Assembly: GCF_947568905.1 (NCBI RefSeq)
Contig: NC_079165.1
Span: forward strand, 65,906,001 to 65,970,000
Direction of reading: 5' to 3'
Length of the DNA: 64,000 nucleotides
DNA from: Ostrea edulis
Taxonomy: Eukaryota
A model generated the notes under the pieces. It had not been told where the DNA came from. It did not search any database and saw nothing but the letters and a program-made list of their open reading frames with translations. Positions 6,463 to 40,800 of this stretch are shown piece by piece (the stretch's first letter is position 1; the number at the start of each line of letters is the position of its first letter). Both the position numbers and the translations under genes were made by a program.

Positions 6463-23116
<16,654 letters not shown>

Positions 23117-23340
23117 TACTACATGTAATAGGCAGTATGGAGGCAAATTCTGTGCAGAAATTACCTGGTGCTCAAGAATAGAATAACGTTTTCGAAATAC
23201 TGTGCAATATGTGGAATTTAGTGAATTAAACAGCTAAACAGTGTAAAAGGATTATGTCAATTGTTAAAACACTCTAATTCTGAATTTAGAGCATGATGAA
23301 TACTAAGTACACAACAATTTTCCTCACATGTAATTTCATG

Positions 23341-23362
23341 TTTATTAACAAATGTAAATAAA
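23341..23362. terminator. Opposed poly(A) signals for EZH2 (+) and the small minus-strand gene
   Basis: TTTATT at 23341-23346 (AATAAA on the - strand) and AATAAA at 23357-23362. Confidence 0.5.
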
Positions 23363-23668
23363 ATGAAATACTGTTTTCTTCTTTTGAAATTACATGCATT
23401 GATTTTTTTGTACCAGTATATATAAAAATATGAAGGCAGTATGATAAATGATCCATTAAGGATTAAGAATACAGCGTCAACTGGAGGCCAACGCTTGGAA
23501 ATAATATTGAAATGTGTCTTTGAGTCAACAAACATCATAATCATTTTCCCTCATATTAGGTAACCATGCTTCAAATTGATTGTCACATTCCATCTTGGAT
23601 GATAAAGATTTTGCCTTTCATAATGACATAAAATATGTAAACATCTGCTAATTAATCTGTTAGCAACT

Positions 23669-26600
23669 TCATGAAGTTTGTTGTAGTCCCATGTGCCTCA
23701 GCTGTTCTGGTGTGAGAACTTCAGCAGCATGTTCTGCCTGCCAAGCAGCCACTTTCTCCTTCCCAAGTTCTGCATGCAGTTTGGCAAGCTTCTGTTCTGA
23801 TTTTACCGTTTCTGAGTTCATCCTGTTTCAAAATAATATTCTTATTACTTTCACATTTTGATAGTTTAACTAAAATTTGTAATTTGAGACATCATGTCAT
23901 AGGCATGTGATACAATGGCAGTCATCAGAACTTAGCATTTAGCTTTCCTACAAAGCTGGCAAACCACAGTATACTATTTCTATTTGCTTGACGATGTTTG
24001 TGAATGTGCACATCAGAGTCAACTGTACTGTAATGCTTATAACATGTCTTTAGTTCTTAAAAATGTCAATTTACAACCCTTTTATGTAAAGTAAGGTCAA
24101 AAGAAAAAAATATTAAACCATTATATCTAGTCATATAACTTTTCATCACAAGAATGATTCATGTAAAAATATGTACAATCAGACTTGCTGCATTATGTTT
24201 TGAGGCAACTACCACCGTATTACATTTAGTTTATTAGTTTACCAGCTAGCAAACATGGATTTACAACTTTGTTGCCATAACCGTTTCATCATTTGTCTTT
24301 GAATGCTGTCTGAGAAAAGTACAGGTGACCCATAAACAGTTTTATAAGAATCTACAGAGAAAATACCATTTAACTGTTTATCTGTAAATACTGTTTCCTA
24401 TTGACCACTTCTAAATTTATTTTGCTCATTTAGAATTATGTTCATTTGACCAAGAGAAGCGATATACACCAATTAACTCATGATTAAGCTTTTGGAGGAG
24501 AAAATATTGTTTTACGGTATATATATATTTCATTTTGTAATTACTGCATACCATTTACTCTTATGTATCTAGGATTGTATTAATCCACTCTTATATGTCT
24601 ACTACTTTGGGAACAAAAGGCGCATTATAATAGGATTCTGTGTAAAGCTTACTGTTTGCAAAAACCATTGATTTAACACTGACCTTCGGCTCTCTGACAT
24701 GGCTCGGGAGAAAAAGTCCAGCGCTCTCTTGTCATCAATGTCCTCTGTGGCATTCATTTTTCCATCCTCCTAAAATAAAAGTTTTTGAAAGCTTATTTAA
24801 ATTTGCAATACGCATAATGTACTAGTGCTGTTGTCAGATGTCAAATACACTGGTAAACTCCATCCCAGTCTGATTAAAATCAAATCCTTAGATCTGTTTG
24901 CATCCCTCATTACTCAAAAACAATTTCTTGGGAAGAGGGGGGGGGGGGGGGGATTGAGTATTGCAAGTCTGCTTTGAAATTAATTGTTTCAAAAACTTTG
25001 ATTTCTTGATTTAAGCCATATGATTAATTGATTGTTGTATTGTTACAATTATCAATAATTGAATTGTTGCTCTATCTTTGCTCTATCTAAATGAATTTCG
25101 CATTAATCAATAAAATTAGATTACATACAGACTAATATGATTATGTGAAAATATCTCTAAAAGTAATGCTGACAACTTTTTAGGTCACCTGAGTAAACTC
25201 GGGTGACCTATTGCAATTGGTCGTTGTGTATTAACAATTGAACATTTTTAACTGCTTGATAACTACCAGCCCAATTCTTTTCAAATTTGGTATGAAGCAT
25301 CATTGGGACAAGGGGGACATAAATTGTAAATTTCAAGACTCCAACACCCCTAGGGGCGGGGCAAAAACTGCCCGAAATTGACAAATTTTCAAAAATCTTC
25401 TCAAGAACCACACACGGGAAAGAAAAACTAAATGCATAGTGATGTAGAGCAGGAAAGCCTCTACCAAAATTGTAAATTTCATGATCCCCTGGGTAGGGGT
25501 TCTGACCCTAGGGCAGGGCCAAACTTGGTATATAGTGTTTGTGTAAAACACTTGAATAATATCTTTTTAGTGCTATTTATACTAAATTGAAACGAAATGG
25601 ATAGAGCAGGTAGTCTTTTACCGTAAACTTGATGATCCCCAGAGTAAGGGTTCTGACCCCAGGGTAGGGCCAAACTTAGTATATAGTATTTATGGGTAAG
25701 TTTGCTGATGCAGTATAAAATCTAAATGCATACTTAGGAATAGCAGAAAAGAATGTACAAAAAATGGTGAATTTCACAACCCAGGGTTATGACTTTAGGA
25801 TGAGTCCAAATTAGTCATATCTTTTGATGTTTTAATGTTAATACACCTATTATTTAAAGCCTTTCATCAGTGTATGCACTTTTGAGGCCAGTAAAGTTTT
25901 AAGAACACATCTTGTTTTATAATGTTGCTGAACATTAGAATTTAGCTTAAATATTCAGAACAGGATTTTTTTCTCTAGATTTTATAACCCATGGAAGTAG
26001 TAATACTAGTACTCAGGTGACCGATTAGGCCTGTGGGCCTCTTCTTTACTAAACCTACCACGCAAAAATGAATGTGTTAGAAAGGTGTCTCTGCTGTAAA
26101 TTGAGACCCGACTAATGGGTGATGAGTAGGAAATCCTAATCTGAATCTTTTGACGTCATGTGCAACAAATGTAGAGATTTGTGCTGAGTCTGATGAATGT
26201 GTAAACAAAGCAAATGAATATACGTTTAAACATAGCTATTAGTTTAAGCTCAAAACTTATATTAAAGACTTCAGACTTATAATATCTGCCATTCTGTGCC
26301 TTGATCGTATTGCATACATGTACACGTGAATGTGCTAGATGCATTTATTACTCTTTCAAAATGAGACAAGTAAACCTGCAGGGGGCAACATTGTACATTT
26401 GAGGATGTTCACCTTCACTTTTTAACTATGAACCGGATTTATACTGTAGAGTCACTTTTTTTAAAAATTATTATTTTGGTTATGACGGTCATGTAAACTG
26501 CATGACGGTTGTGTATAGCCGATATATAAAATAGGTACACTACGTGTATAGGGCCTACAGCCGGTGTACATTAGGTACCCAGGGGTCTAGCGAATAGCCG

Positions 26601-27041
26601 ATTTATAATAGGCCTAGACGTCGACGGTCGGGCGAATAGCCGATATATGGGGTGTGATTTTTCCTCTTTTCAGAGGAAATCCTCTGATTTGCTCAATTGT
26701 CGAAAAAATGAAACACTCTGGATTTGATCTAAAGTGGCAGAAAATTATATTTTTCCAGGTAGGGTGAGGTGTATTCCTCCCTTTTTGACCAGTTTTCCTC
26801 TGATTTCTGAGGAATTCAGTCACATCCCTGCGATATACAATAGGTGCACTGGTCAGTGTGTTTCGTTAGTTTATCACATATGTCGGTATAACTTTGTCAT
26901 TTCATGAGCTATTATCTTCTCATGGATGCTCTAACAATAAATACAGAATACCTTTTGTTTGTTATAATGCTCGGTGATAAAATCTTCTAAGCTTTTCGCA
27001 GATTTGTCCTCTTTTTCGTGGTCGTTTGCCTCGTCCGCCAT
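23669..27041 (-). CDS. Uncharacterised 109-aa acidic/helical protein, 3 exons
   Basis: Exons 27041-26952, 24769-24684, 23822-23669; GT-AG, phases 0 and 2 match, 330 nt, strong start context (CAAATGG). Translation: MADEANDHEKEDKSAKSLEDFITEHYNKQKEDGKMNATEDIDDKRALDFFSRAMSESRRMNSETVKSEQKLAKLHAELGKEKVAAWQAEHAAEVLTPEQLRHMGLQQTS. Confidence 0.8.
25177..26046 (+). mobile_element. Helentron-type element (family A, uninterrupted)
   Basis: Same 5' hairpin and 3' end as 20204-22529; internal tandem units with GGGGTTCTGACCC. Confidence 0.8.
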
Positions 27042-27404
27042 TTGTAAACAATGAGAGGCACTGCAAAGCTAGTTGATTGTATGTTTTCGAACTTTTATCT
27101 ACAATGCAAACAATTGTTGTTCTCGAAATATTTTATGAAATGATAAATAATAAACAATTGAAAAAACTTGGTGTTACACGCAATATCTTCTTTTTACCAC
27201 ATCTGAGTATTTTTTATGTTGTCATGGAGCTATGTAAATCATCATTCGGAATTCCTCGTACTCGTCCCTTGATATAGGAAAAAGCGTCTAGAGGAGTTCC
27301 GATGTTGCAGGTGCCCGTTGTAAACTATACTTGGTAACGGTAAGGATTAACTTCATAATCGCGTTATTGTGCAGTAATCCAAATACTCATAAGATTAATT
27401 AATT
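27042..27404. promoter_or_regulatory. Probable bidirectional promoter (363 bp between two start codons)
   Basis: Divergent ATGs at 27041 (-) and 27405 (+). Forkhead-type TGTAAACAA 27043-27051, X-box-like GTTGTCATGGAGCT 27218-27231, RFX half-site GGTAAC 27333-27338. Motif function is inference. Confidence 0.6.
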
Positions 27405-30400
27405 ATGCCGCGAAGAGGAGGAAGTGATAACGGATCAGAGAATCCTGAACTGGTGGGGACTTTTGAGACACTTCGTGATGAGGGCGAACACTTCGTTCAC
27501 GTCAAGCAATGGCAAAAAGCAATCGACAGCTTCACAAGGGTATGCCTATTTTTGTATTTTTAAACACGTCATATTGATCATTTATATCTGCAGCTTATAA
27601 AGTATTTAAATAGATTAAATCATTAGTGAAAGTTATCGAAATATTTTTGTTTCTCCTAATCCACACTTAATTACATGTGCCACATACAAAAGCTACTACA
27701 TTGTAATTGCTTCTGGTTAATAAAATCAAGTTTTGAAAGAAAACAATCTGCAAAATTCTATCAATACCTTAATAGATAGACTGTTGCTGATTGGGTTTTT
27801 TTTAAACTTGGGTCTAATTTTACAAGCCAGGGACAAGGCCATATTATAAAGACTTTGCATTTGTTTTACTTCTTGGAATGGGCAGTTATGGGAATTAAAT
27901 TATTCTCGTGTGCATCCAATAGATACATAAACACACTCCATCTTTACTAGCAATCTAATTAAAATTAGATGTTAGATCTGCTCGTGTACTCACATACATA
28001 ATTATGTATGCAAGTACGCGAGCGGATCTAACATCTAATTTTAATTAGATTGTCTTTACTAGTAAACATATGGGAAAGGCTGTGTCATATAAGATTTGAT
28101 ATTTCAGCTACATAGATTAAATTGTTCATATTGCCTGTATATAATGCATGTATGAATTGATTATTAAGGCCATTGACATGAACCCTGAGGACAAGAAATG
28201 TTATGTGACGAGATCAAAATGCTGGTTACAACTTGGCAATGCTGAGAATGCTCTTATTGATACTGAGGAAGCCCTCAAACAGGACAAAGAGTACATCCCA
28301 GTAAGTTGGTCAAGTTTTGTATTCTAAAAAACAAAAAGAGGGGGGGGGGGGTGAAACTATTCTGAGTAATTGCAAGAAAAAATCATGCAAAGAAGGAACT
28401 GATAAAGACCTAAAATTTATCCCTTTTTCAGGCACTATTACAGAAGTCAGAGGCAATGTACCAGTTAGGAGATTTTGAAACAGCCTTAGTGTATTTTCAT
28501 AGAGGACATAAATTAAGACCAGAATATCAAGAATTTAGACTGGGAATCCAGAAAGCACAGGAGGCCATCAACAACAGCATAGGAAGTAAGTTTTGTATTG
28601 ATGAAAGCAAATATATAATTAATAAATGCATGCATCATTTTCATACTAGCTCATGTAGATGTAGCTAACACACAGGCACACAAGATCTGAACTGAATACT
28701 ACACCCTTCCAAATTATAATTTTATCATTAATTATTATTTACTAGCTGCCATCTTCATTTTGATTTACAACTGAAATGATGAGAAATAAACTATTAACAA
28801 TATCATTACTAACCAGCAAGACACCCCGTACAGTCTTTCAAAGGACATATGTTTTATTTCTGTATGTATAATATGATCTAAATTTAATTTTATCAAGCAA
28901 CAAACATGAAAATACATGGATATATGTATTTACCTTACCGGAAAAGAATTGTTTCAACATGTTCAAATTTTGATTTACTCTTGACACAGAGCCAGATTCG
29001 GTCAAACTCACAGCAGAAGGTGACTTGACTTATTTCTACAAACAAGAAGAGGTAAATTATTTCTATTTATTCTTCCTTGGTTTTATTTTTGTTTCTTTTG
29101 AGCATGATTTTCTTGTGCTAGACATTTTCTGAGGATTCTTTGTAATCAAGAGTTTTTTATTGCGCTATTTCTGATTACTAGTAAATGAAATAAATTCGAA
29201 CATGGCAAAGTAGTAATGTAAATATGTTTTATGCTGTTTTATCTTATTGTTAAAATGAATAGTCTGATTTATCAATTTCTACATTGTCTTATTTGAAACT
29301 AAATTTCAACAGTTATTTCCAACGGTAAATTGATTTGCATTGGGTCAGGGTTGTGTTCTTTCAATACAACTTAATTAAGTCATCTGTCAGACAATCTATT
29401 TAAGCAAATGGGAGAAAAGTTCAAAAGTATTGAAAGAACATTTGAATTCAAGAGATTTGCTGTGTTATAATACAAATTGTGTGAACATCTATGCATGTAC
29501 ATTTAGACTTGGCAAAATACTTTCATAGATAATCCTAAGTACTTGCCTGATAATCATTGCTGAGTATAAAAGTATAAAATGGCTAAAAAAATACTTTTGA
29601 AATGTTGGTTATTTGCTGCACAGTACAATATATAAGCATGTTATTTGTACAATGCATGTATAAACACATCATGTACCCATGAACTAGAAATTCATTTTTG
29701 CATGGTTGGTAAAAATGTATTAATTTAAGAGATAAGATTTAATCAACAAGATGTGCAATTACTTCATTGGTGTAACATCATTGGCTCATTCTACACAGAC
29801 AAACACAGAGAATGATGTCAGCTTGAGTTTGAACTGCTTTGATATATACTGCTTGTTGCGTGTTCTTTATAAGCATGTATGTATTGTATAGGATGAAAAG
29901 GCCAAGGTAATCAACGAGTGTGTTGTAGATTTTCCTGTCAAATATTTTGCTTTCTCATTCTCTGCCAATCCTGTTGTAGAAATTCTGTCATTATACATAT
30001 CTAGATATTATACCTTTTCCATGATTTCTGGTCTTTAAATTCATAATTTTATGAACATTTTAATGAAGACATTGTATACATATAATCATTAATTTATATT
30101 ACATAATTATATGTATACACTGTATGTATGTATAGTGTATGTAAAGTTTTATAACGTATTGCAAGCTAGTGGGGGTTAAATAGTGTATCTCAACACAGTA
30201 ACAGTAATAAAATCTTTTCACGATTTTTGATGTTGGAATGTAATGCCTAGTCAAAATTATTTCATGATTTCATTCCTTCATTGCACAGGAAACAACAACA
30301 ATTCACAATCTCTCCAATTTCTCAATTTATTTTTACACAGATTTTAATTATTGTTCTTTTTAGATATTAGTGTTTCACAGTTGAGAGAGTGGAGGGGAAG

Positions 30401-33400
30401 GGGACAGACAGAGAGAGAGAGGAGAGGGGGCATACAGAGAGAGAGAGGAGGGGGCAGACAGAGAGAGAAGGGGAGGGGGCAGACAGAGAGAGAGAAGGAG
30501 AGGGGGCAGACAGAGAGAGAGGGGGAGGGGCAGACAGAGAGAGGGGGAGGGAGCAGAGAGAGAGGGGGGGCAGAGAGGGGGAGGGGGCAGACAGAGAGAG
30601 AGAAGGAGAGGGGACAGACAGAGAGAGAGGGGGAGAGGGCAGAGAGAGAGAGGGAGAGGGGGCAGACAGAGAATAAAACTGATCTGGTTGTGTTCATCAG
30701 AATTTTATCTGTACTACATGTGTTTGTTTTACTGAACATATAATTTAAAGAACTTGTTTAAGGAAGATTTTCACAATAAGATTATAATTTCTTGTTGTGT
30801 TATTTCCAAACGTATTAAATTCATCAAGCTATAACATTGCTGTCCCTGAACTATGTGATTTTTGTTTGTTTATCACTGCATATTGTAAATTATATTTTCT
30901 TCATTTTTCTTTCCTCACAGGCCAAGAAGGTACATTATTTTTCATTTAGACACTTACTAGGTGGATTTAGGTTGTGCATTTTCCCTATGAATTAAATTTG
31001 GATATCCTGGCCAAGTATTGCACCAGACTGGGTTAAAAGTAGACAAATTTCCTGGTTCTCGGTGTTTCATATGTTCTTTTATTATCCTTGGTGGTTTGGG
31101 TTTGTCTGTTTGATTACCAAATTTATTTATTTCAGTCACAATGAAAATTGAATTTCGACACCTTTTTTGTGAATTTCATGCAGTCACTTTTATTTTCTTG
31201 ATTTGCACATGTGATACATCATGGATATTAAAAAAAAAAAAACAAATATGAAATTTTGCTTTTTACATGTGTATGAAACACTGATAAATTAAAACATGAT
31301 GATCATAATTTGAAATATTGATTACATGAAAGCACAATTGCTTGTAAATACTACTGTGTAATTTTTGTGTGGGCAATTTTAAGAAGTACTTGAAAGATTA
31401 AAGAGCTTTGCATTTATAGTGGAGTTGCAATGAAATTCATTCTTTTTGATGGACTTGAATAGCTGGCATCAACAATTTGGTTTTCATGTGATAGGTCAAA
31501 ATGCCTTACATCTGAATGAATCTAAGAATTGGATATCATGATTACCTAATATTTCAGGAAGGTCAGTATTGTCTAGGTAGTCACTATACCCAAGGGCAAA
31601 GTCAGGGATATTTTAAAAATGTGGATAAATATTTGGAAAAGAATTCTTAGTTTAAGGATTATAAGTGAAACATCTTGTACTTACATACTACAGTCAAACC
31701 TCATTATCTCATACACAGTGATGGTACTGAGAGGAAACTTTGAGATATCCGAGGGTTTGAGATATTGAGGTTGAAATACATAAGAATATTTAGTTGGGAC
31801 TTCCAACTCACGTCGATATATCCATGGTATTGGAGATATGAATGTTGGAGATTCTGAAGTTCAACTGTATATGAAAAAAGATGTCTATATTGGAGTGGGT
31901 TCACTAGAACTCGTTCCATCAATCTGAATTACCGTTGCAACTCCGCTGTGCGGCTTTGAATCTGACAATGTTTTTGTTCTCATTCTTGTTTTATCACACA
32001 CATATCTTTAGATATATTTAGTGTTAGTGCACTATCATTACTATGGCTACATACTGTATTATTTTTTGTTAAAGAATATGGTGAGTGTCAGTTCATATCT
32101 CATGACCATTTTAGGCCAAAGGGAAGAAGACTGGTGGTACCTATGGAAAACCAGGAGCCAAGAAAGAGGCAGCTAAGGAGAGACAGAGGCCCCAGGGGAG
32201 TGGGGACCAGAAGACCATCAAGCAGCTGCTGGGCGAGCTGTACGGTGACAAGGACTTCCTGGAAAAACTACTCAGTGAAGACAGTATGTATCGGACAAAT
32301 TTAGTAGGTGTTGAATTTGGTAGATCTTGAACTGACTTCAAGGCTTCAGTTGCAATTGTTTTTTCAGTTGGATATATTGAACATACTTCTCCACTCAGTA
32401 AACATGATGACAAGGAGAGCTCAAAATACATTCACTTAAAGATATTGACATTTTAATCTACAGCAAACAGATTTGCTAGAGAGGGTGCTTCAGGCTTATG
32501 TGCCTTGTATTCAACTTACGGCCCAGGAAATACTGTGATTAACAGTTCATTGTCTTTTTTATATTTTGCTAACAGGTTTAACAGGTGATAACAACCCCAC
32601 AAATAAAGGCATTAGAGAGAAGATCTATGATGGGCTGGAGTACTTACATAACCGAGCAGACTTCTGGCGGCAACAGAAACCAATGTATGCCCGTAAACGG
32701 GACAAGATGAAGCAGAGACAGAGTGCAAAAGCCCGCAACCAGGACCCCACCAACTACCTACTCCGGTGTCTAGAGGATATTGATGATGGTGGGTCATATA
32801 TACAAAATTTGTTTTACCTATCAGTAAATTGAACGTACAACCCATTTTTCAGCAGAATTAGAATAGAGAAAGGTAATTTGAAATGGACTTGTAGCTTTTA
32901 CCAACACATCACAGCCTGAATACTTGTAGATTGTCTTTAAATGAAATTGGAGCCAAAAATAAAAAATTCTTTTTAAAATGTTTTTTACTTGTAATACATA
33001 CAATTATGTTCTGGTACATATAATATCACATTATGATATTTATTTTAAATCTGAAATCAGTTAGACCCAGAGGCTGAAGACTTGCCTCCAGATACTGATT
33101 TCTCTGGTTATGAACACATATGATATCAGTATTATTTCCTTAAATGTTTCTTCAGATCAAACAAAGGAGCGATATGAGGAGAGCTTACAGAAAGCCAAGA
33201 AGACGTTGAAGACAGTAGAAAGCATGAGTGATGATCAATTACAGAACAAGGCCGAGATTCTTGCTAATCTCCACAGCCAGATAGGAAATGCTCATCTCGA
33301 ACTCGGCAAACACAATGAATCACTCAAACATCATGAAGAGGACCTCAGGATTGCCAAAGAGAAGTAACAAAATACATTTTATTTGTCAAGCAGAGGCAAA

Positions 33401-36400
33401 ATACAGATTTTATACACATATTTTCATTTTGTATCAATGTCCTTTGTTTGAATCCTGGCCCTGATGTTGTAGTGATTTGGAGGATGCCAGGTCTCGAGCC
33501 TTGGATAACCTTGGAAGAGTCCATGCTCGAAAAGGAAATTACGAGAAAGCCATAGATGTGTAAGTATCCAGTGATGTCATGTCTCCACAGCTTGAATTTT
33601 ACCCATTTTTGAGAATCACTCTTTTGAAATTTTTTTTCCTCTAGAAGGCTTACATGTTGGGGTAGTGTTTTTGTAAATGTCTTGTAAAACTGTCTCCATA
33701 CATTTTGGTAGAAGTATTGGTGTCTGCTATCATAACACTGCTTTTATTGTAGTATTCTTGAAGCGTGGGTAAAATAGTGTGATTCAGAAAAGCAAACGTA
33801 ATATAAAGGGGTGTACGAAAACTTGGAATATATGGTGATAGTGCAACTTGACTGTGTTAGTGTGCGATGGAAATCTCGCGCATTAAACTCCTCTCCAGTA
33901 GACAGTGAACTCTTTATGGATGTTTATGATTTATTTCATAAATGTTGGATTCTGAATATGTATATGAAAGTATTAAGGTGATATTGAGATAGTTATTGAT
34001 TTATATCACCTTGACACCATAATAAGAGCAAGTCTTATACAGAAAACCATAACTTAAACGAGATCCATTGGTTGCCTTCAAATATGCTAATAAAATTTGA
34101 TCAAAATGAGGTTTTCGTAGACTCTTGTGATAATAAGCATGTGATATTTATCTGTAATGAATATATATTTTCATAGACCATTTCAAGAAATGATATGTAC
34201 TTATATACATGTATTAGCTTTTGTTGACCAACTGAGTACTGATATACTGTATGTGTAGTTATTTTTAGCAGGTTCATATTTTAGCGCCTTTGGCGTTGAA
34301 GCAAGAACACTAATTTATTGTTGCGTTAATTAGGAAAATCTCTATTTATCCATTATCAAACACAGAACAAGCGCTAAATCATGATTATGCCAAATATTGC
34401 ATCAGATCCAACTGTGCCAAATTTTAAATTTGCCAAAGTAAGTACGCATACAGTATGTGAACAATTACTTATCCAACATACTGATGATGAGATCAACGGA
34501 TTCATGTGTCAGCAATATGTCCAATTCAAATTAGACACAGGCTATGGTAGATCTATCCAGAATTTGTCTAGTTTTTATGTACTAATAATGAGTATCCGAT
34601 ATCCAAAGAAGAGAGGGAGTGCTAGAACTGGACAGTTTCTGTGTTGTAGGAGAATCCTTTATTGCATGGACGATGTTTTCATTATAAATGTAACAAAACT
34701 CATTAACATATATATTTATTTTTGCAAGCTTTACCAGAAAATATTTAATACCATAATGTATAATACAAGAGTACATGTACTTACTTGCTTGCACATAAAT
34801 TTTCCTAAAGTTATTTTATGTAAAGTTTTATAAAACTTGAGAGAACTTTCAATCATTTATTCTGAAATCTATGAACAAAGTGTGAACAAATACATTATAT
34901 TGTGCCTTGCACTACATGACTGAAATTAAAAATTTTCTGAATTTATAGATGGGAAGAAAAATTACCCTTGAGTAAATCTCCACTAGAGAGCACCTGGTTG
35001 TACCATGAGATTGGACGTTGTTACCTGGAGCTACAGAGATTCCAAGATTCCAGAGATTTTGGAGAGAAAGCCATACAGGCCGCAAAAGAAGCGGAGGATG
35101 ATGGCTGGCAGCTTCATGCTAGTGTCCTTGTAGCTCAGTCAGAGGGTGCGTACACATTACACTGTCATGTTTCTGAGTAATATTGCTGTATTCAGACATA
35201 GGGAGTGTGTATTCAGATATGACATAGGGAGTGTGTATTCAGAAATAGGGAGTGTGTATTCAGACATAGGGAATGTGTATTCAGACATAGGGAGTGTGTA
35301 TTCAGACATAGGGAGTGTGTATTCAGACATAGGGAGTGTGTATACAGACATAGGGAGTGTGTATTCAGACATAGGGAATGTGTATTCAGACATAGGGAGT
35401 GTGTATACAGACATAGAGAGTGTGTATTCAGACATAGGGAGTGTGTATTCAGAATTAGGAAATGTGTATTCAGACATAGGGAGTGTGTATTCAGACATGA
35501 CATAGGGAGTGTGTATTCAGACATGACATAGGGAGTGTGTATTCAGACATAGAGAGTGTGTATTCAGACATAGGGAGTGTGTATTCAGAATTAGGGAATG
35601 TGTATTCAGACATAGAGAGTGTGTATTCAGACATAGGGAGTGTGTATTCAGACATTGGGAGTGTCTATTCAGACATAGGGAATGTGTATTCAGACATAGG
35701 GAGTGTGTATTCAGACATAGGGAGTGTGTATTTAGACATAGAGAGTGTGTATTCAGACATAGGGAATGTGTATTCAGACATAGGGAGTGTGTATTCAGAC
35801 ACATAGGGAGTGTGTATTCAGACATAGAGAGTGTGTATTCAGACATGACATAGGGAGTGTGTATTCAGACATAGGGAGTGTGTATTCAGACATAGGGAGT
35901 GTGTATTCAGACATAGAGAGTGTGTATTCAGAAATGACATAGGGAGTGTGTATTCAGACATAGAGAGTGTGTATTCAGACATAGAGAGTGTGTATTCAGA
36001 CATAGGGAGTGTGTATTCAGAATTAGGGAATGTGTATTCAGACATAGGGAGTGTGTATTCAGACATAGGGAGTGTGTATTCAGACATAGGGAGTGTGTAT
36101 TCAGACATAGAGAGTGTGTATTCAGACATAGGGAGTGTGTATTTAGACATAGAGAGTGTGTATTCAGACATAGGGAATGTGTATTCAGACATAGGGAGTG
36201 TGTATTTAGACATAGGGAGTGTGTATTCAGACATAGAGAATGTGTATTCAGACATAGGGAGTGTGTATTCAGACATAGGGAGTGTGTATCAGTTTTAGGG
36301 AGTGTCGTTACTGAACTATTTTGTATTGAGTCAAGGGTAAGTACTCTTACAGTCAGTTGTCTTTGTAAAGAGTTTAAAATTATGAATTTCTGTTTTTACA

Positions 36401-37870: not shown

Positions 37871-40800
37871 GCTGGAATCTAGATTTATATACTGTACGGT
37901 AAAATAATTTATTTTCGTGAGTATTTAATTTTTGTTGATTTTATGGAATAGACGTACCCATTCAAATCCTTCATGAACAACAGAAACATAACTTCAATAA
38001 AATATGATAATTCTTCAACCAAGAGCTTAGGTCCCCTATTAACTTGCTTATCGTTCTCAAGCCACAAAAATTTGACCCTACAGAAATAAATGATTCTATG
38101 GTGTTATGCACGATTGATTTTCCTTCTTTTTAGCATTATAGCGACCACATGTATTTTTAACTCTGACCATTACCAGATGTAATTTGTAGCCTGTATTATT
38201 ATAAGTATATATTTTGTTTAAAGGGACTGGTTAAAGTTTTTCGAAAGAAATGTTTTTCATTTCTTATGTTAAAAATTAAAAATATAGCTCATTTAATGTT
38301 GACAACCAAAATCATGACTGTCTGAATGCAAGGATAAAAGCAGTATTTTAGCTTTGATTCTGTGTTATGTAAACAAAGATTCCAGTCTTTTTATGTAAAC
38401 AAACAAACCAGTGAAATGTTAATTTTGTGATTTAAAGCATCTTCATTTTGTACAATCACAAATTTTAACTTTTAAATGACACATTTTACCTAAAGTATAC
38501 TTGAGATGCGAGATATATATAATAAACTTCCAGGATCAATGTCCATTTATTTTGAAAACCCCGTAAACAATAATACACCTCAAAACAAAACAAAACAAAT
38601 AATAAACTCTCTATAATGAGCTTCTGTCATGATGATTAACCTTAATTTTTTTTGTGAAACCTTCTAAAACATATTAGACTGTAGATTTTGATCATTTGAT
38701 GTGAAGATCGTGAATCAGTCCCTTTAATATGTTTACCAGTAAGTAAGAATCAGTTAGTTTGATACCTTGCTCATAATTTTGACCCTATTCTTATTAAGAC
38801 GGCCGAGATGAGGATTACCCTGATGACTTTGAACAGGACCAGCAAGGTGAATCACCATGTTGTAACTCTATTGTTCCTCTCCTTTTTAGCAGAATCTGTT
38901 TGCTATTACTTTCAAAGGCACTGGTATAAGCCTAATCCATGCAACTGACAGATTAGAAATATATTACATGTATTTCATGTATATTTCTGCTATGTAATAA
39001 GTTTTTAAAATTTATTCTTTTTCCTTTCAATCTGATATTTTATTAACCCTTTCCTGATGACATTAGACAATGGCAGTAATCAGGAGTCAAACTCGAAACC
39101 TGAACAGACATCAAAACAGGAGAGCACTGAGTCAAAACCCGATGAAAATCCAAACGCAATGACATTAGACAATGGCAGAAATCAGGAGTCAAACCTGAAA
39201 CCTGAGCAGACGTCAAAACAGGAGAGCACTGAGTCAAAACCTGATGACAACACCAATACAGAGGACAAGGACAATGAACAGACAGAAGCAGCAAGCCCTA
39301 CACAACCGCAGTCTCCCTCAAAAATAAAGCCCTCCACTAGTCCCCAGTCTCCAACAAAATCAAAGCCCACTGCTAGTAAAAGGAAAGAGAGCAAGAAAGG
39401 ATCTGATAGTAGGAGAGTCAGCAAGGAGTCGCAGAAGTCCACAAAGAATGCTCCTGGTCACAAGAGTGAGGCACAGAAGAAGACGTCCAAGTCCTCCTCA
39501 AAAGGAAAAGCTAGTCCTCCAGCAAAGAAAAGCAGCACTCAAGAGAAGACAGAGTCTACAGAAAAGGAACCAATGGAAGAAAACTCAAAGAGAAATGAAA
39601 TAGATGATGAAAATGACGAAATAAGAAAGGTGTCGGAGGCCAACTCTGAAGTTAATTTGTTTGAAAATGAAGAAGACAAAAAAGGTCATTCTCAAGCCAA
39701 ACCAACATCAAAGCCCAAGAAGAAATCTTCTGTGGAGATGCCACCCAGAAAGAGGTCTTCTCCTAGTCCATATGAACAAAATTCAAAGACGACATCCACT
39801 ACTAGTACAAAAAGCAAAAAGAATTCTACATCTAGCAATGAGAAAAGTGAAGAGAAGTCCAAACAAGAGACAGATGGGATAGAAGATAAGTCAAAGGTTG
39901 ATAGCAAAGAGGAGCTGGCACTGGACAGCAAAGACAAAAAGCAAACTGAGGAACTGCCAGAACAGAGTAAATCAGAGGAAAATGTGTATGAGGAGAGAAA
40001 GGACGGGAATCAAACCGAGCGGAAAGCCGAACCAAAGGAAAGTGACTCTGAGGGAAATATAATGCCCTCACAAGATGGTGAGTCCCTGCACCATGAGGCA
40101 TGAGATGTTGTGACACAGGGGCATGACAGTAGGAAGTAGATCTGTGTTGTGTCGTTATACAGTTAAACACTATACCCTGGAGGATGTGCATGTTTGTACT
40201 TCAACATGTCAATTTAGGATTGTGTAGCATGATCATATCTGTGCAATTTAAAGTGTCAGAATGTACAGTAGTTGAATAATTTTTCTTTCTTTTTAATGTT
40301 GTGATTAGGATTACTAGAAAATTAATTATTACTTTGCATTTCAGGGTCTTGTAGGTATTTTATTGAAATTTGGCCCATAGTTTTAATATTTTCATTTTGT
40401 AGAATAAAACAATGAATAGAGAACTTTACTTATAGAATATCTTCCTGTTCACATTTCATACTAGCCATAGATTTCAAGCTGCCGACAACAAGGTCTAGTC
40501 CCAGACCTCCTGGTTCAGGGGTGAGTCTTCAACCACGAACTAATTCTCGTCCACGCTCTGTCAGCATCAAGGAACCACCCGAGTCTGAAAAAGGCTCCAA
40601 AGGGTTTCACGAAGAAACAGGATCTAATGGGACAGGACATTTGTCTACTTCCATGAAAAAGAAAACCCCCTCTCCGGTGGTCAGAAAGGAAACACCAGGG
40701 ATTGATGGGAATGGATCGACCAAGAGTCCAGCTGGTAGTGCCAAGAGCAACAAACCCGCATCAGAGCCTGGGAATTTTGAAGGTCGAAACAAAAACATGG

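What the first reader, a model, noticed from the sequence alone, without database searches (positions are those of the whole stretch)
23669..27041. Unrecognised 109-aa micro-gene wedged between EZH2 and TTC25
Seen: three GC-richer minus-strand exons (90, 86, 154 nt) with good splice sites join in phase from a strong ATG to TGA. Each is below the ORF-track threshold. I cannot assign the protein to a family. It has an acidic N-terminus and a predicted helical or coiled C-terminus (SEQKLAKLHAELGKEKVAAWQAEH). Inference: since it shares a promoter with an axonemal gene, it may be an undescribed cilia or sperm protein.
Basis: partly seen in the sequence, partly recalled or inferred. Interest (0 to 1): 0.7.

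Follow-up and report, generated by a model that had tools for sequence, protein, structure and literature searches.

The report
Small conserved uncharacterised gene beside ODAD4
The three short exons are a real, spliced and expressed oyster gene for a 109-residue helical protein that public annotation already lists as "uncharacterized"; relatives occur from sea anemones to amphioxus, but nothing yet shows it works in cilia or sperm.

Summary
Exons 27041-26952, 24769-24684 and 23822-23669 (minus strand) have GT/AG borders. One transcript contig from a public run joins them at exactly those junctions.

The gene is not unrecognised. Its product is letter for letter RefSeq "uncharacterized protein LOC125678864 [Ostrea edulis]".

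It belongs to an old, unnamed family:
- The profile search found 103 cluster representatives.
- Members occur in bivalves, gastropods, octopus, brachiopod, nemerteans, annelids, sea urchins, amphioxus, cnidarians, and GC-rich microbial eukaryotes.
- The family has no Pfam model, no solved structure and no paper found.
- Intron positions are shared across phyla.

AlphaFold2 gives a disordered acidic N-terminus and three main helices, with no informative fold match.

The head-to-head pairing with ODAD4 (TTC25) is conserved in oyster, scallop, mussel, abalone, Lingula and Lineus. The tail-to-tail EZH2 neighbour is conserved in oyster, Lingula and Lineus. Amphioxus, sea urchin and Nematostella lack both pairings.

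I read the protein as a small non-enzymatic helical binding subunit. A cilia role remains an untested inference (about 0.2): no RFX X-box in the shared promoter, no match to any solved chain, and no vertebrate among the named hits.

The parts
27042..27098 (-). 5' UTR, minimum extent. Its last 12 nt (27053-27042) are a conserved element, CATTGTTTACAA, directly before the ATG.
   Evidence: The X1 transcript contig (record 6) reaches 27098. The 12-mer is identical in mussel L013 and Lingula L005, and similar in scallop and Lineus.
26952..27041 (-). Exon 1 coding part, 30 codons from the ATG (acidic N-terminus and the start of helix 1).
   Evidence: The donor AAG|GTATTC is used in the X1 contig.
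24770..26951 (-). Intron 1 (2182 nt). It holds high-copy repeats at about 25055-26116 and 26648-26830.
   Evidence: The joint in X1 skips exactly this stretch. Repeat depths run to thousands in all runs.
24684..24769 (-). Exon 2 (86 nt), ending in phase 2. It encodes the acidic linker and the start of the long central helix.
   Evidence: An exon of 28-29 codons sits at the same position in scallop, Lingula, amphioxus and sea urchin.
23823..24683 (-). Intron 2 (861 nt).
   Evidence: The joint in the X1 contig skips exactly this stretch, with GT..AG ends on the minus strand.
23669..23822 (-). Exon 3 coding part (154 nt including the TGA). It encodes the rest of helix 2, helix 3 and the C-terminal tail.
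23405..23668 (-). 3' UTR covered by transcript contigs. The only canonical AATAAA on this strand is further down at 23346-23341.
   Evidence: X1 record 2 spans 23405-23779 and X3 record 18 spans 23089-23653. The poly(A) signal scan is.
27099..27306 (.). Shared divergent promoter region between the outermost transcript evidence of the two genes (at most 208 bp). The ATG-to-ATG distance is 363 bp.
   Evidence: Transcript contigs end at 27098 (small gene) and 27307 (ODAD4 exon 1, X1 record 7). Contigs cannot prove true transcription starts.
27307..27540 (+). ODAD4 (TTC25) exon 1, with its ATG at 27405. This is the divergent neighbour.
   Evidence: (X2 record 16, a 1723-nt mRNA contig).
23055..23380 (+). 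EZH2 last exon (coding to the TGA at 23114-23116) and its 3' UTR. This is the convergent neighbour, and its 3' end probably overlaps that of the small gene.
   Evidence: X2 record 9 (a 2718-nt contig) starts here at the acceptor site. The AATAAA at 23357 is.

Best explanation
This is a genuine, single-copy, three-exon protein-coding gene, already annotated as Ostrea edulis LOC125678864. Its product is 109 residues, 12.5 kDa, pI 5.2, with no cysteine and no predicted membrane segment. It belongs to an ancient, unnamed and uncharacterised eukaryotic family. Shown: splicing and expression, orthologues in at least seven animal phyla, shared intron positions, and a roughly 78-residue conserved core (residues 18-95) predicted as three helices (18-31, 43-78, 80-94). 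Inferred mechanism: the protein is a non-enzymatic helical module that binds a conserved partner. The long central helix carries a conserved hydrophobic/small stripe (F49/F50, A53, S57, M60, S67, L74). Beside it lies a basic ladder spaced seven residues apart (R45, R52, R59, K66, then K70) with acidic E56 and E63. Helix 3 carries the E89-H90-A91-x-E93-V94-L95 motif with an invariant histidine. In lophotrochozoans the gene is transcribed divergently from ODAD4 across a short shared promoter, so the two genes are probably co-regulated there. Which partner it binds, and whether the protein acts in cilia, is not known.
For: The exon model and splice sites are. All three coding differences between X1 and the window (27030, 27015, 23711) are third-position and synonymous, while the 3' UTR carries at least 7 substitutions plus indels (my codon reading). 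The gene is single copy in its own genome. Database protein P0007 contains the three exon translations at residues 1-30, 31-58 and 60-109, with R59 from the split codon. A profile of four bivalve proteins found 103 representatives at E<=1e-3 and 30 at E<=1e-10. Named members are all 'uncharacterized' or 'hypothetical' and span Mollusca, Brachiopoda, Nemertea, Annelida, Echinodermata, Cephalochordata and Cnidaria. Intron positions are conserved in scallop, Lingula, amphioxus and sea urchin. A Mytilus transcript contig, L014, carries the uninterrupted ORF. The AlphaFold2 model built with 31 sequences has pLDDT 78 overall and 88-96 over residues 50-100. ODAD4 is the divergent neighbour in six lophotrochozoans.
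Against: No experiment bears on function. The binding-module idea rests only on conservation patterns and a monomer model of moderate global confidence (pTM 0.49). The conserved stripe could be merely the intramolecular core of a small helical bundle. I could not read model coordinates to separate buried from exposed residues. The invariant His90 with Glu89 and Glu93 could instead mean metal binding or catalysis. X1 and X2 are labelled RNA only by guess. Their RNA nature is inferred from exon-only coverage and spliced contigs.
Confidence: 0.8

Rival explanations
1. One reading: the protein works in motile cilia or sperm flagella, for example with the outer-dynein-arm docking complex, and is co-expressed with ODAD4 from the shared promoter.
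For: The head-to-head pairing with ODAD4 is conserved in oyster, scallop, mussel, abalone, Lingula and Lineus. A forkhead-type core, TTGTTTAC, sits in a 12-nt block before the ATG that is identical in oyster, mussel and Lingula. Motile-cilia genes are typically driven by FOXJ1, a forkhead factor (my knowledge). Both genes are covered in runs X1 and X2. In sea urchin, the ciliary kinesin KIF9 lies 7 kb downstream.
Against: The pairing is absent in amphioxus, sea urchin and Nematostella. No RFX X-box with two or fewer mismatches lies in the oyster or scallop intergenic region. Forkhead-like words are not clearly enriched there: the background fraction reaching the observed count is 0.07-0.69. 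The family profile matches no chain in the PDB at E<=10. That library includes axoneme cryo-EM entries, such as the ODAD4-bearing 8j07 and 7rro. None of the named hits is a vertebrate, although vertebrates have ODAD4 and motile cilia. Conserved bidirectional pairs are often functionally unrelated (general knowledge).
Confidence: 0.2
2. The central helix is a ubiquitin-interacting motif (UIM), and the protein is a small ubiquitin-binding adaptor.
For: The core hydrophobic-x-x-Ala-hydrophobic-x-x-Ser pattern is present. It runs F50-x-x-A53-M/L54-x-x-S57. Ala is invariant, Ser/Thr occupies 94% of sequences, and the flanking residues are always hydrophobic. The pattern follows an acidic run (E39-D43). 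The comparison with the UIM consensus is from memory.
Against: The Pfam UIM model is not among the families listed for any of the 31 members at E<=1, nor for the oyster protein at E<=10. The position four residues before Ala is an invariant Phe, not acidic. The position seven after Ala is a near-invariant Met, not acidic. The acidic run is displaced by about 6 residues. The motif sits inside a 36-residue helix predicted to pack against other helices.
Confidence: 0.07
3. The gene is functionally tied to EZH2/PRC2. This could be through its protein, or through the overlapping convergent 3' ends acting as antisense regulation.
For: The tail-to-tail EZH2 neighbour is conserved in oyster, Lingula and Lineus. 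In the oyster the two stop codons are 552 bp apart. The nearest poly(A) signals (23346 minus strand, 23357 plus strand) imply about 60 nt of 3' overlap. One RNA contig spans 23089-23653.
Against: Scallop and mussel have other genes downstream. Nothing resembles a known PRC2 accessory protein. The linkage may be inherited synteny: human EZH1 and ODAD4 both lie at 17q21, from memory.
Confidence: 0.03
4. The three exons are a chance ORF or a non-coding promoter-upstream transcript.
For: Each exon is short, and no known domain matches.
Against: The protein is 61-83% identical in other bivalves and is recognisable in cnidarians and amphioxus with the same intron positions. The observed differences are synonymous only.
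Confidence: 0.01

Closest known systems
RefSeq/UniProt 'uncharacterized protein' orthologues: Ostrea edulis LOC125678864, Magallana gigas K1R6Z4, Mizuhopecten LOC110449379, Lingula LOC106181377, Nematostella A7S231, Branchiostoma C3XPE5
   Same: The O. edulis entry is the identical sequence. The others are 30-83% identical over the full length, with the same three conserved blocks and the same intron positions where checked.
   Different: Nothing differs in kind. None has a name, a Pfam family, a structure or any paper that my search found.
Ubiquitin-interacting motif (UIM, Pfam PF02809)
   Same: The hydrophobic-x-x-Ala-hydrophobic-x-x-Ser core lies on a helix after acidic residues.
   Different: The Pfam model gives no listed hit. 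Positions that are acidic in UIMs are an invariant Phe and a near-invariant Met here. The helix is part of a larger conserved three-helix core.
Small helical subunits of large assemblies, such as BLOC-1/BORC-type, Mediator Med21-type and kinetochore small coiled-coil subunits
   Same: Similar size, all-helical prediction and conserved heptad-like stripes. The weak shape matches are of this kind (Med21 TM 0.37, Mis12 Z 4.4, DASH Z 4.5).
   Different: No sequence relationship was found. All structural scores lie in the range the tool itself calls common for helical models (best Z 5.7).
Outer dynein arm docking complex (ODAD1-5)
   Same: The gene shares a divergent promoter with ODAD4, conserved in three lophotrochozoan phyla.
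   Different: There is no similarity to any ODAD subunit or to any chain in solved axoneme structures. The linkage is not conserved outside Lophotrochozoa.

Membership tests
Orthologous group of Ostrea edulis LOC125678864 (unnamed family) | Full-length sequence similarity that includes the three conserved blocks (L-x-x-F...Q; F-hyd-x-R-A-hyd-x-E-S-x-R-M...K-S-x-x-K; E-H-A-x-E-V-L) | tested here: met
   P0007 is identical to the exon model. The alignments are A1 and A2.
Orthologous group of Ostrea edulis LOC125678864 (unnamed family) | Three coding exons with shared intron positions | tested here: met
   tblastn of scallop, Lingula, amphioxus and sea urchin proteins on their own loci gives a middle exon of 28-29 codons at the same alignment position.
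Orthologous group of Ostrea edulis LOC125678864 (unnamed family) | Conserved neighbourhood (ODAD4 divergent, EZH2 convergent) | tested here: met
   This is met only within Lophotrochozoa. ODAD4 is the divergent neighbour in six species, and EZH2 the convergent one in oyster, Lingula and Lineus. It is not met in amphioxus, sea urchin or Nematostella.
Ubiquitin-interacting motif (PF02809) | Match to the family's profile | tested here: not met
   PF02809 is not reported for P0007 at E<=10. It is not among the 25 families listed for the 31 members at E<=1. The model is very short, so HMMER's filters may hide weak matches.
Ubiquitin-interacting motif (PF02809) | Acidic residues directly before the hydrophobic-x-x-Ala core, and an acidic residue seven positions after Ala (consensus recalled from memory) | tested here: not met
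   Position Ala-4 is an invariant Phe, and position Ala+7 is Met in 97% of sequences.
Ubiquitin-interacting motif (PF02809) | Binds ubiquitin | not testable with these tools
   This needs a binding assay or a complex prediction. The structure tool folds single chains only.
Axonemal / outer-dynein-arm docking proteins | Sequence or fold match to a component of solved axonemes | tested here: not met
   The profiles of A1 and A2 gave 0 PDB chains at E<=10. Foldseek's best hit had E 3.8, and VIA-align's best Z was 5.7, with only generic helical hits.
Axonemal / outer-dynein-arm docking proteins | Ciliary promoter signature (RFX X-box) | tested here: not met
   No X-box with two or fewer mismatches was found in the oyster or scallop intergenic region. 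The other species gave only 2-mismatch hits.
Axonemal / outer-dynein-arm docking proteins | Expression or protein presence in ciliated tissue, sperm or isolated cilia | not tested
   The runs found carry no tissue label and are contigs only. The supplements of the ciliary proteome preprint are not held.

The most novel reading that the evidence does not exclude
The gene represents an undescribed, ancient eukaryotic protein family that runs from microbial eukaryotes to amphioxus and has been lost or diverged beyond recognition in vertebrates and ecdysozoans. Its product would be a small helical partner of the motile-cilia machinery. In lophotrochozoans it would have been held beside ODAD4 for over 500 million years by a shared forkhead-responsive bidirectional promoter.
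Probability: 0.15. Interest if true: 0.55.

Novelty: already known. Interest (0 to 1): 0.3.

Why it matters
As a gene discovery it does not matter, because public annotation already has this model and its orthologues. Its modest value lies elsewhere. It is a clean example of a conserved, expressed small protein family with no Pfam model, no structure and no literature. It is present in most marine invertebrate phyla sampled and in some microbial eukaryotes. It also sits in a three-gene micro-synteny (ODAD4 divergent, EZH2 convergent) kept in molluscs, a brachiopod and a nemertean, with a 12-nt block before the start codon identical between oyster, mussel and Lingula. That makes it a reasonable candidate for a family description and a simple functional test. 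It also offers a handle on how divergent promoters are conserved. It does not by itself open a long-standing question.

Tried and rejected
- **Exon-by-exon searches.** Pfam, PDB and protein-atlas searches with the separate exons gave nothing.
- **Full-length searches.** I used database protein P0007 and family alignments A1 and A2.
  - Pfam gave only sub-threshold noise such as BRE1, Caulimovirus coat and DUF1266.
  - PDB sequence profiles gave zero hits.
  - The feature-based atlas search gave scores of 0.87 or less, against phage and bacterial hypotheticals.
  - Fold searches gave Foldseek PDB E 3.8, atlas TM below 0.5 and VIA-align best Z 5.7. All are generic helical matches and I rejected them as evidence.
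- **Literature.** Six accession or locus names gave 0 papers. The ODAD4/TTC25 promoter search gave nothing relevant. The supplements of the ciliary proteome preprint are not held.
- **RFX X-box scan** of the shared promoters was negative.
- **Forkhead-word enrichment** was not convincing.
- **Naming the GC-rich microbial members.**
  - Looking up their neighbours' clusters gave no organism names.
  - Pfam on the neighbours shows eukaryotic domains only (PH, RING, BolA).
  - L009 has GC 0.67-0.70.
  - I therefore could not test whether these organisms have flagella.
- **Genomic loci for O. edulis and M. gigas** through the look-up of encoding contigs were not on record.
- **COA3.** I considered this small gene near human EZH1 as a possible vertebrate counterpart because of an LTPEQL-like string recalled from memory. 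I rejected it: it is a membrane protein and the similar strings lie in a different order.
- Every full-length analysis used the database record P0007, and a script checked only that it contains each exon's translation.
Full report
**1. The observation**

On the minus strand, exon 1 runs from the ATG at 27041 to 26952 (90 nt, phase 0). Exon 2 runs 24769-24684 (86 nt). Exon 3 runs 23822-23669 (154 nt, ending in TGA). The donor sites are AAG|GTATTC and AAG|GTCAGT. The acceptors are ...TTTTAG|GAG and ...AAACAG|GAT. Exon GC is 0.41-0.50, against 0.31-0.36 for the introns and 0.338 for the window.

**2. Splicing and expression**

I laid contigs of four public runs on 22400-27700. Run X1 contains a 325-nt contig (record 6) covering 26951-27098. 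It has two joints that skip 2182 nt and 861 nt, both with GT..AG ends on the minus strand. These are exactly the two predicted introns. The DNA run X4 covers the same ground colinearly.

X1 and X2 are labelled RNA only by guess. They behave as transcriptomes:
- Unique intron sequence has zero depth.
- A 2718-nt contig enters the window exactly at the EZH2 last-exon acceptor (23055).
- A 1723-nt contig ends in ODAD4 exon 1.

X1 comes from a slightly different genotype ("organism A"). Its three differences inside the coding exons (27030, 27015, 23711) all fall on third codon positions and are synonymous by my reading of the frame. The 3' UTR (23405-23668) carries at least seven substitutions and small indels. 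The gene is single copy in its genome.

**3. Identity**

- The exon-3 peptide found Crassostrea proteins that continue upstream into the exon-2 sequence across the same junction.
- Using one of them (P0003) as query returned P0007, "uncharacterized protein LOC125678864 [Ostrea edulis]", 109 aa.
- A script showed that P0007 contains the three exon translations at residues 1-30, 31-58 and 60-109, with R59 from the split codon AG|G.

So the gene is already annotated, and the window is Ostrea edulis or something very near it. All later full-length work used P0007 by reference.

**4. The family**

Bivalve orthologues are 61-84% identical. A profile of four bivalve proteins, run against 1.84 billion cluster representatives, gave 103 hits at E<=1e-3 and 30 at E<=1e-10.

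Cluster look-ups and the third word search put names on members, every one "uncharacterized", "hypothetical" or "predicted":
- Bivalves: unionids, Dreissena, Mytilus, Solemya and three scallops.
- Other molluscs: Haliotis, Lymnaea, Bradybaena and Octopus.
- Other lophotrochozoans: Lingula; the nemerteans Lineus and Tubulanus; the annelids Ridgeia and Paralvinella.
- Deuterostomes: the sea urchins Lytechinus and Diadema; Branchiostoma.
- Cnidarians: Nematostella and Acropora.

Further members sit on gene-dense contigs from aquatic metagenomes. One of these, L009, has about 68% GC. Their neighbours carry PH, RING and BolA domains, so they are microbial eukaryotes. I could not name them.

No vertebrate, arthropod or nematode is among the named hits. 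Many hits remain unnamed, so absence from those groups is not shown.

The three-exon structure, with a middle exon of 28-29 codons at the same place, is shared by scallop, Lingula, amphioxus and sea urchin. A Mytilus transcript contig carries the uninterrupted ORF.

**5. What the protein looks like**

- Basic properties: 12.5 kDa, pI 5.2, no cysteine.
- Fold: with the 31-sequence alignment, AlphaFold2 gives mean pLDDT 78 and pTM 0.49. Residues 50-100 score 88-96. Residues 1-13 are disordered. The helices are 18-31, 43-78, 80-94 and 97-102.
- Invariant positions: F21, F49, A53 and H90.
- Positions conserved in at least 80% of sequences: L18, Q29, R52, E56, S57, R59, M60, E63, K66, S67, K70, L74, G79, E89, A91, E93, V94 and L95.
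- Pattern on the long helix: the residues form a hydrophobic/small stripe. Next to it is a basic ladder with heptad spacing (R45, R52, R59, K66).
- Database searches: no Pfam family reaches threshold for any of the 31 members, and no PDB sequence matches the profiles.
- Fold searches return only generic helical matches.

**6. Neighbourhood**

EZH2 lies upstream on the + strand and ends at 23116. ODAD4/TTC25 starts at 27405 on the + strand. Transcript evidence for the small gene reaches 27098, and for ODAD4 it reaches back to 27307. At most about 208 bp therefore separate them, which makes this a divergent promoter.

| Species | Divergent ODAD4 neighbour | Convergent EZH2 neighbour |
|---|---|---|
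| Oyster (window) | yes | yes |
| Scallop | yes | no |
| Mussel | yes | no |
| Abalone | yes | not seen |
| Lingula | yes | yes |
| Lineus | yes | yes |
| Amphioxus | no | no |
| Sea urchin | no | no |
| Nematostella | no | no |

In scallop, mussel, abalone, Lingula and Lineus the identity of the TPR neighbour as ODAD4 was confirmed by tblastn with oyster ODAD4 exons. The block is therefore a lophotrochozoan micro-synteny, not a universal feature of the family.

**7. Testing the cilia inference**

For:
- The ODAD4 pairing is conserved.
- The 12 nt before the ATG (CATTGTTTACAA, window 27053-27042) are identical in oyster, mussel and Lingula, and similar in scallop and Lineus. They contain a canonical forkhead core. 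An in-frame stop 30 nt upstream shows that the block is non-coding.

Against:
- No X-box lies in the shared promoter.
- Forkhead words are not clearly enriched.
- The family profile hits no solved chain, axonemal ones included.
- The pairing dissolves outside Lophotrochozoa.
- No vertebrate member was seen, although vertebrates have ODAD4.

The ATG context (AAATGGCGG / AAGATGGCGG) also resembles a YY1 site, by memory. It overlaps the conserved Met-Ala-Asp codons, so this cannot be separated from coding constraint.

I put the cilia reading at about 0.2.

**8. Other readings**

The segment F50-x-x-A53-M54-x-x-S57 resembles the core of a ubiquitin-interacting motif. Pfam's UIM model gives no listed hit, and two positions that are acidic in UIMs are an invariant Phe and a near-invariant Met here. 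I put this at about 0.07.

A link to EZH2 rests only on the convergent neighbourhood and the probably overlapping 3' ends. The nearest poly(A) signals are at 23346 (minus strand) and 23357 (plus strand). I put this at about 0.03.

A chance ORF is excluded by the cross-phylum conservation.

**9. Verdict**

The claim of being unrecognised does not hold, because the gene is a public RefSeq model. The cilia or sperm function is an open and weakly supported guess.

My best reading is a small soluble helical binding subunit from an old, unnamed family, probably co-regulated with ODAD4 in lophotrochozoans.

Interest is modest at 0.3. The family deserves a name and a simple functional test, but a specialist would find nothing here very surprising.

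Noticed in passing
window 27042-27053 (minus strand); L013 9989-10000; L005 9989-10000; compare L003, L015 and L008 just before position 10001: The 12 nt directly upstream of the small gene's ATG (CATTGTTTACAA) are identical in oyster, mussel and the brachiopod Lingula. Scallop and Lineus keep TTGTTT(G/A). The block contains a forkhead-type core, and together with ATGGCGG it gives a YY1-like word. Species where the gene is not beside ODAD4 lack it.
   Followed up: partly
window 23055-23668: EZH2 (+) and the small gene (-) converge, with their stop codons 552 bp apart. Their nearest AATAAA signals (23357 on + and 23346 on -) point past each other, so the two 3' UTRs probably overlap by about 60 nt. 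One RNA contig (X3) spans 23089-23653 without a break.
   Followed up: partly
window 25055-26116, 26648-26830 and 22400-22576: High-copy repeats lie inside intron 1 and downstream of EZH2, with depths of thousands in every run. Contigs join about 25943-25972 back to about 22444-22486, so the same repeat family flanks the gene on both sides. These are probably transposon fragments.
   Followed up: no
window 35146-36300 and 30344-30743: Two tandem-repeat blocks lie inside the ODAD4 gene region. One is a minisatellite giving long repetitive ORFs on both strands (GSVYSDI-type units). The other is a GA/CT-rich block.
   Followed up: no
window 39057-40103 (+): A 348-codon open frame is rich in Lys, Ser and Glu and has low complexity. 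It lies downstream of the ODAD4 TPR exons and may be a lineage-specific C-terminal extension of ODAD4 or a separate exon. The ODAD4 neighbours range from 600 to 795 aa in the other species.
   Followed up: no
L007 18993-21570; L004 about 9985-9993; L013 20837-25813: In sea urchin the convergent neighbour 7 kb downstream is the ciliary kinesin KIF9. In amphioxus a perfect CRE palindrome (TGACGTCA) lies 5 nt before the ATG. In mussel the downstream gene is a DnaJ protein. Human DNAJC7 lies beside ODAD4 (from memory), which hints at older synteny.
   Followed up: no
P0004, P0005, P0010, P0012, P0013, P0024 (database proteins): Several short database 'proteins' are gene-caller read-throughs of single exons of this gene into intron sequence on unspliced genomic contigs. 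They inflate the hit lists but are not isoforms. RefSeq 'isoform X2' entries in C. virginica and Haliotis start at the internal Met of exon 2.
   Followed up: partly
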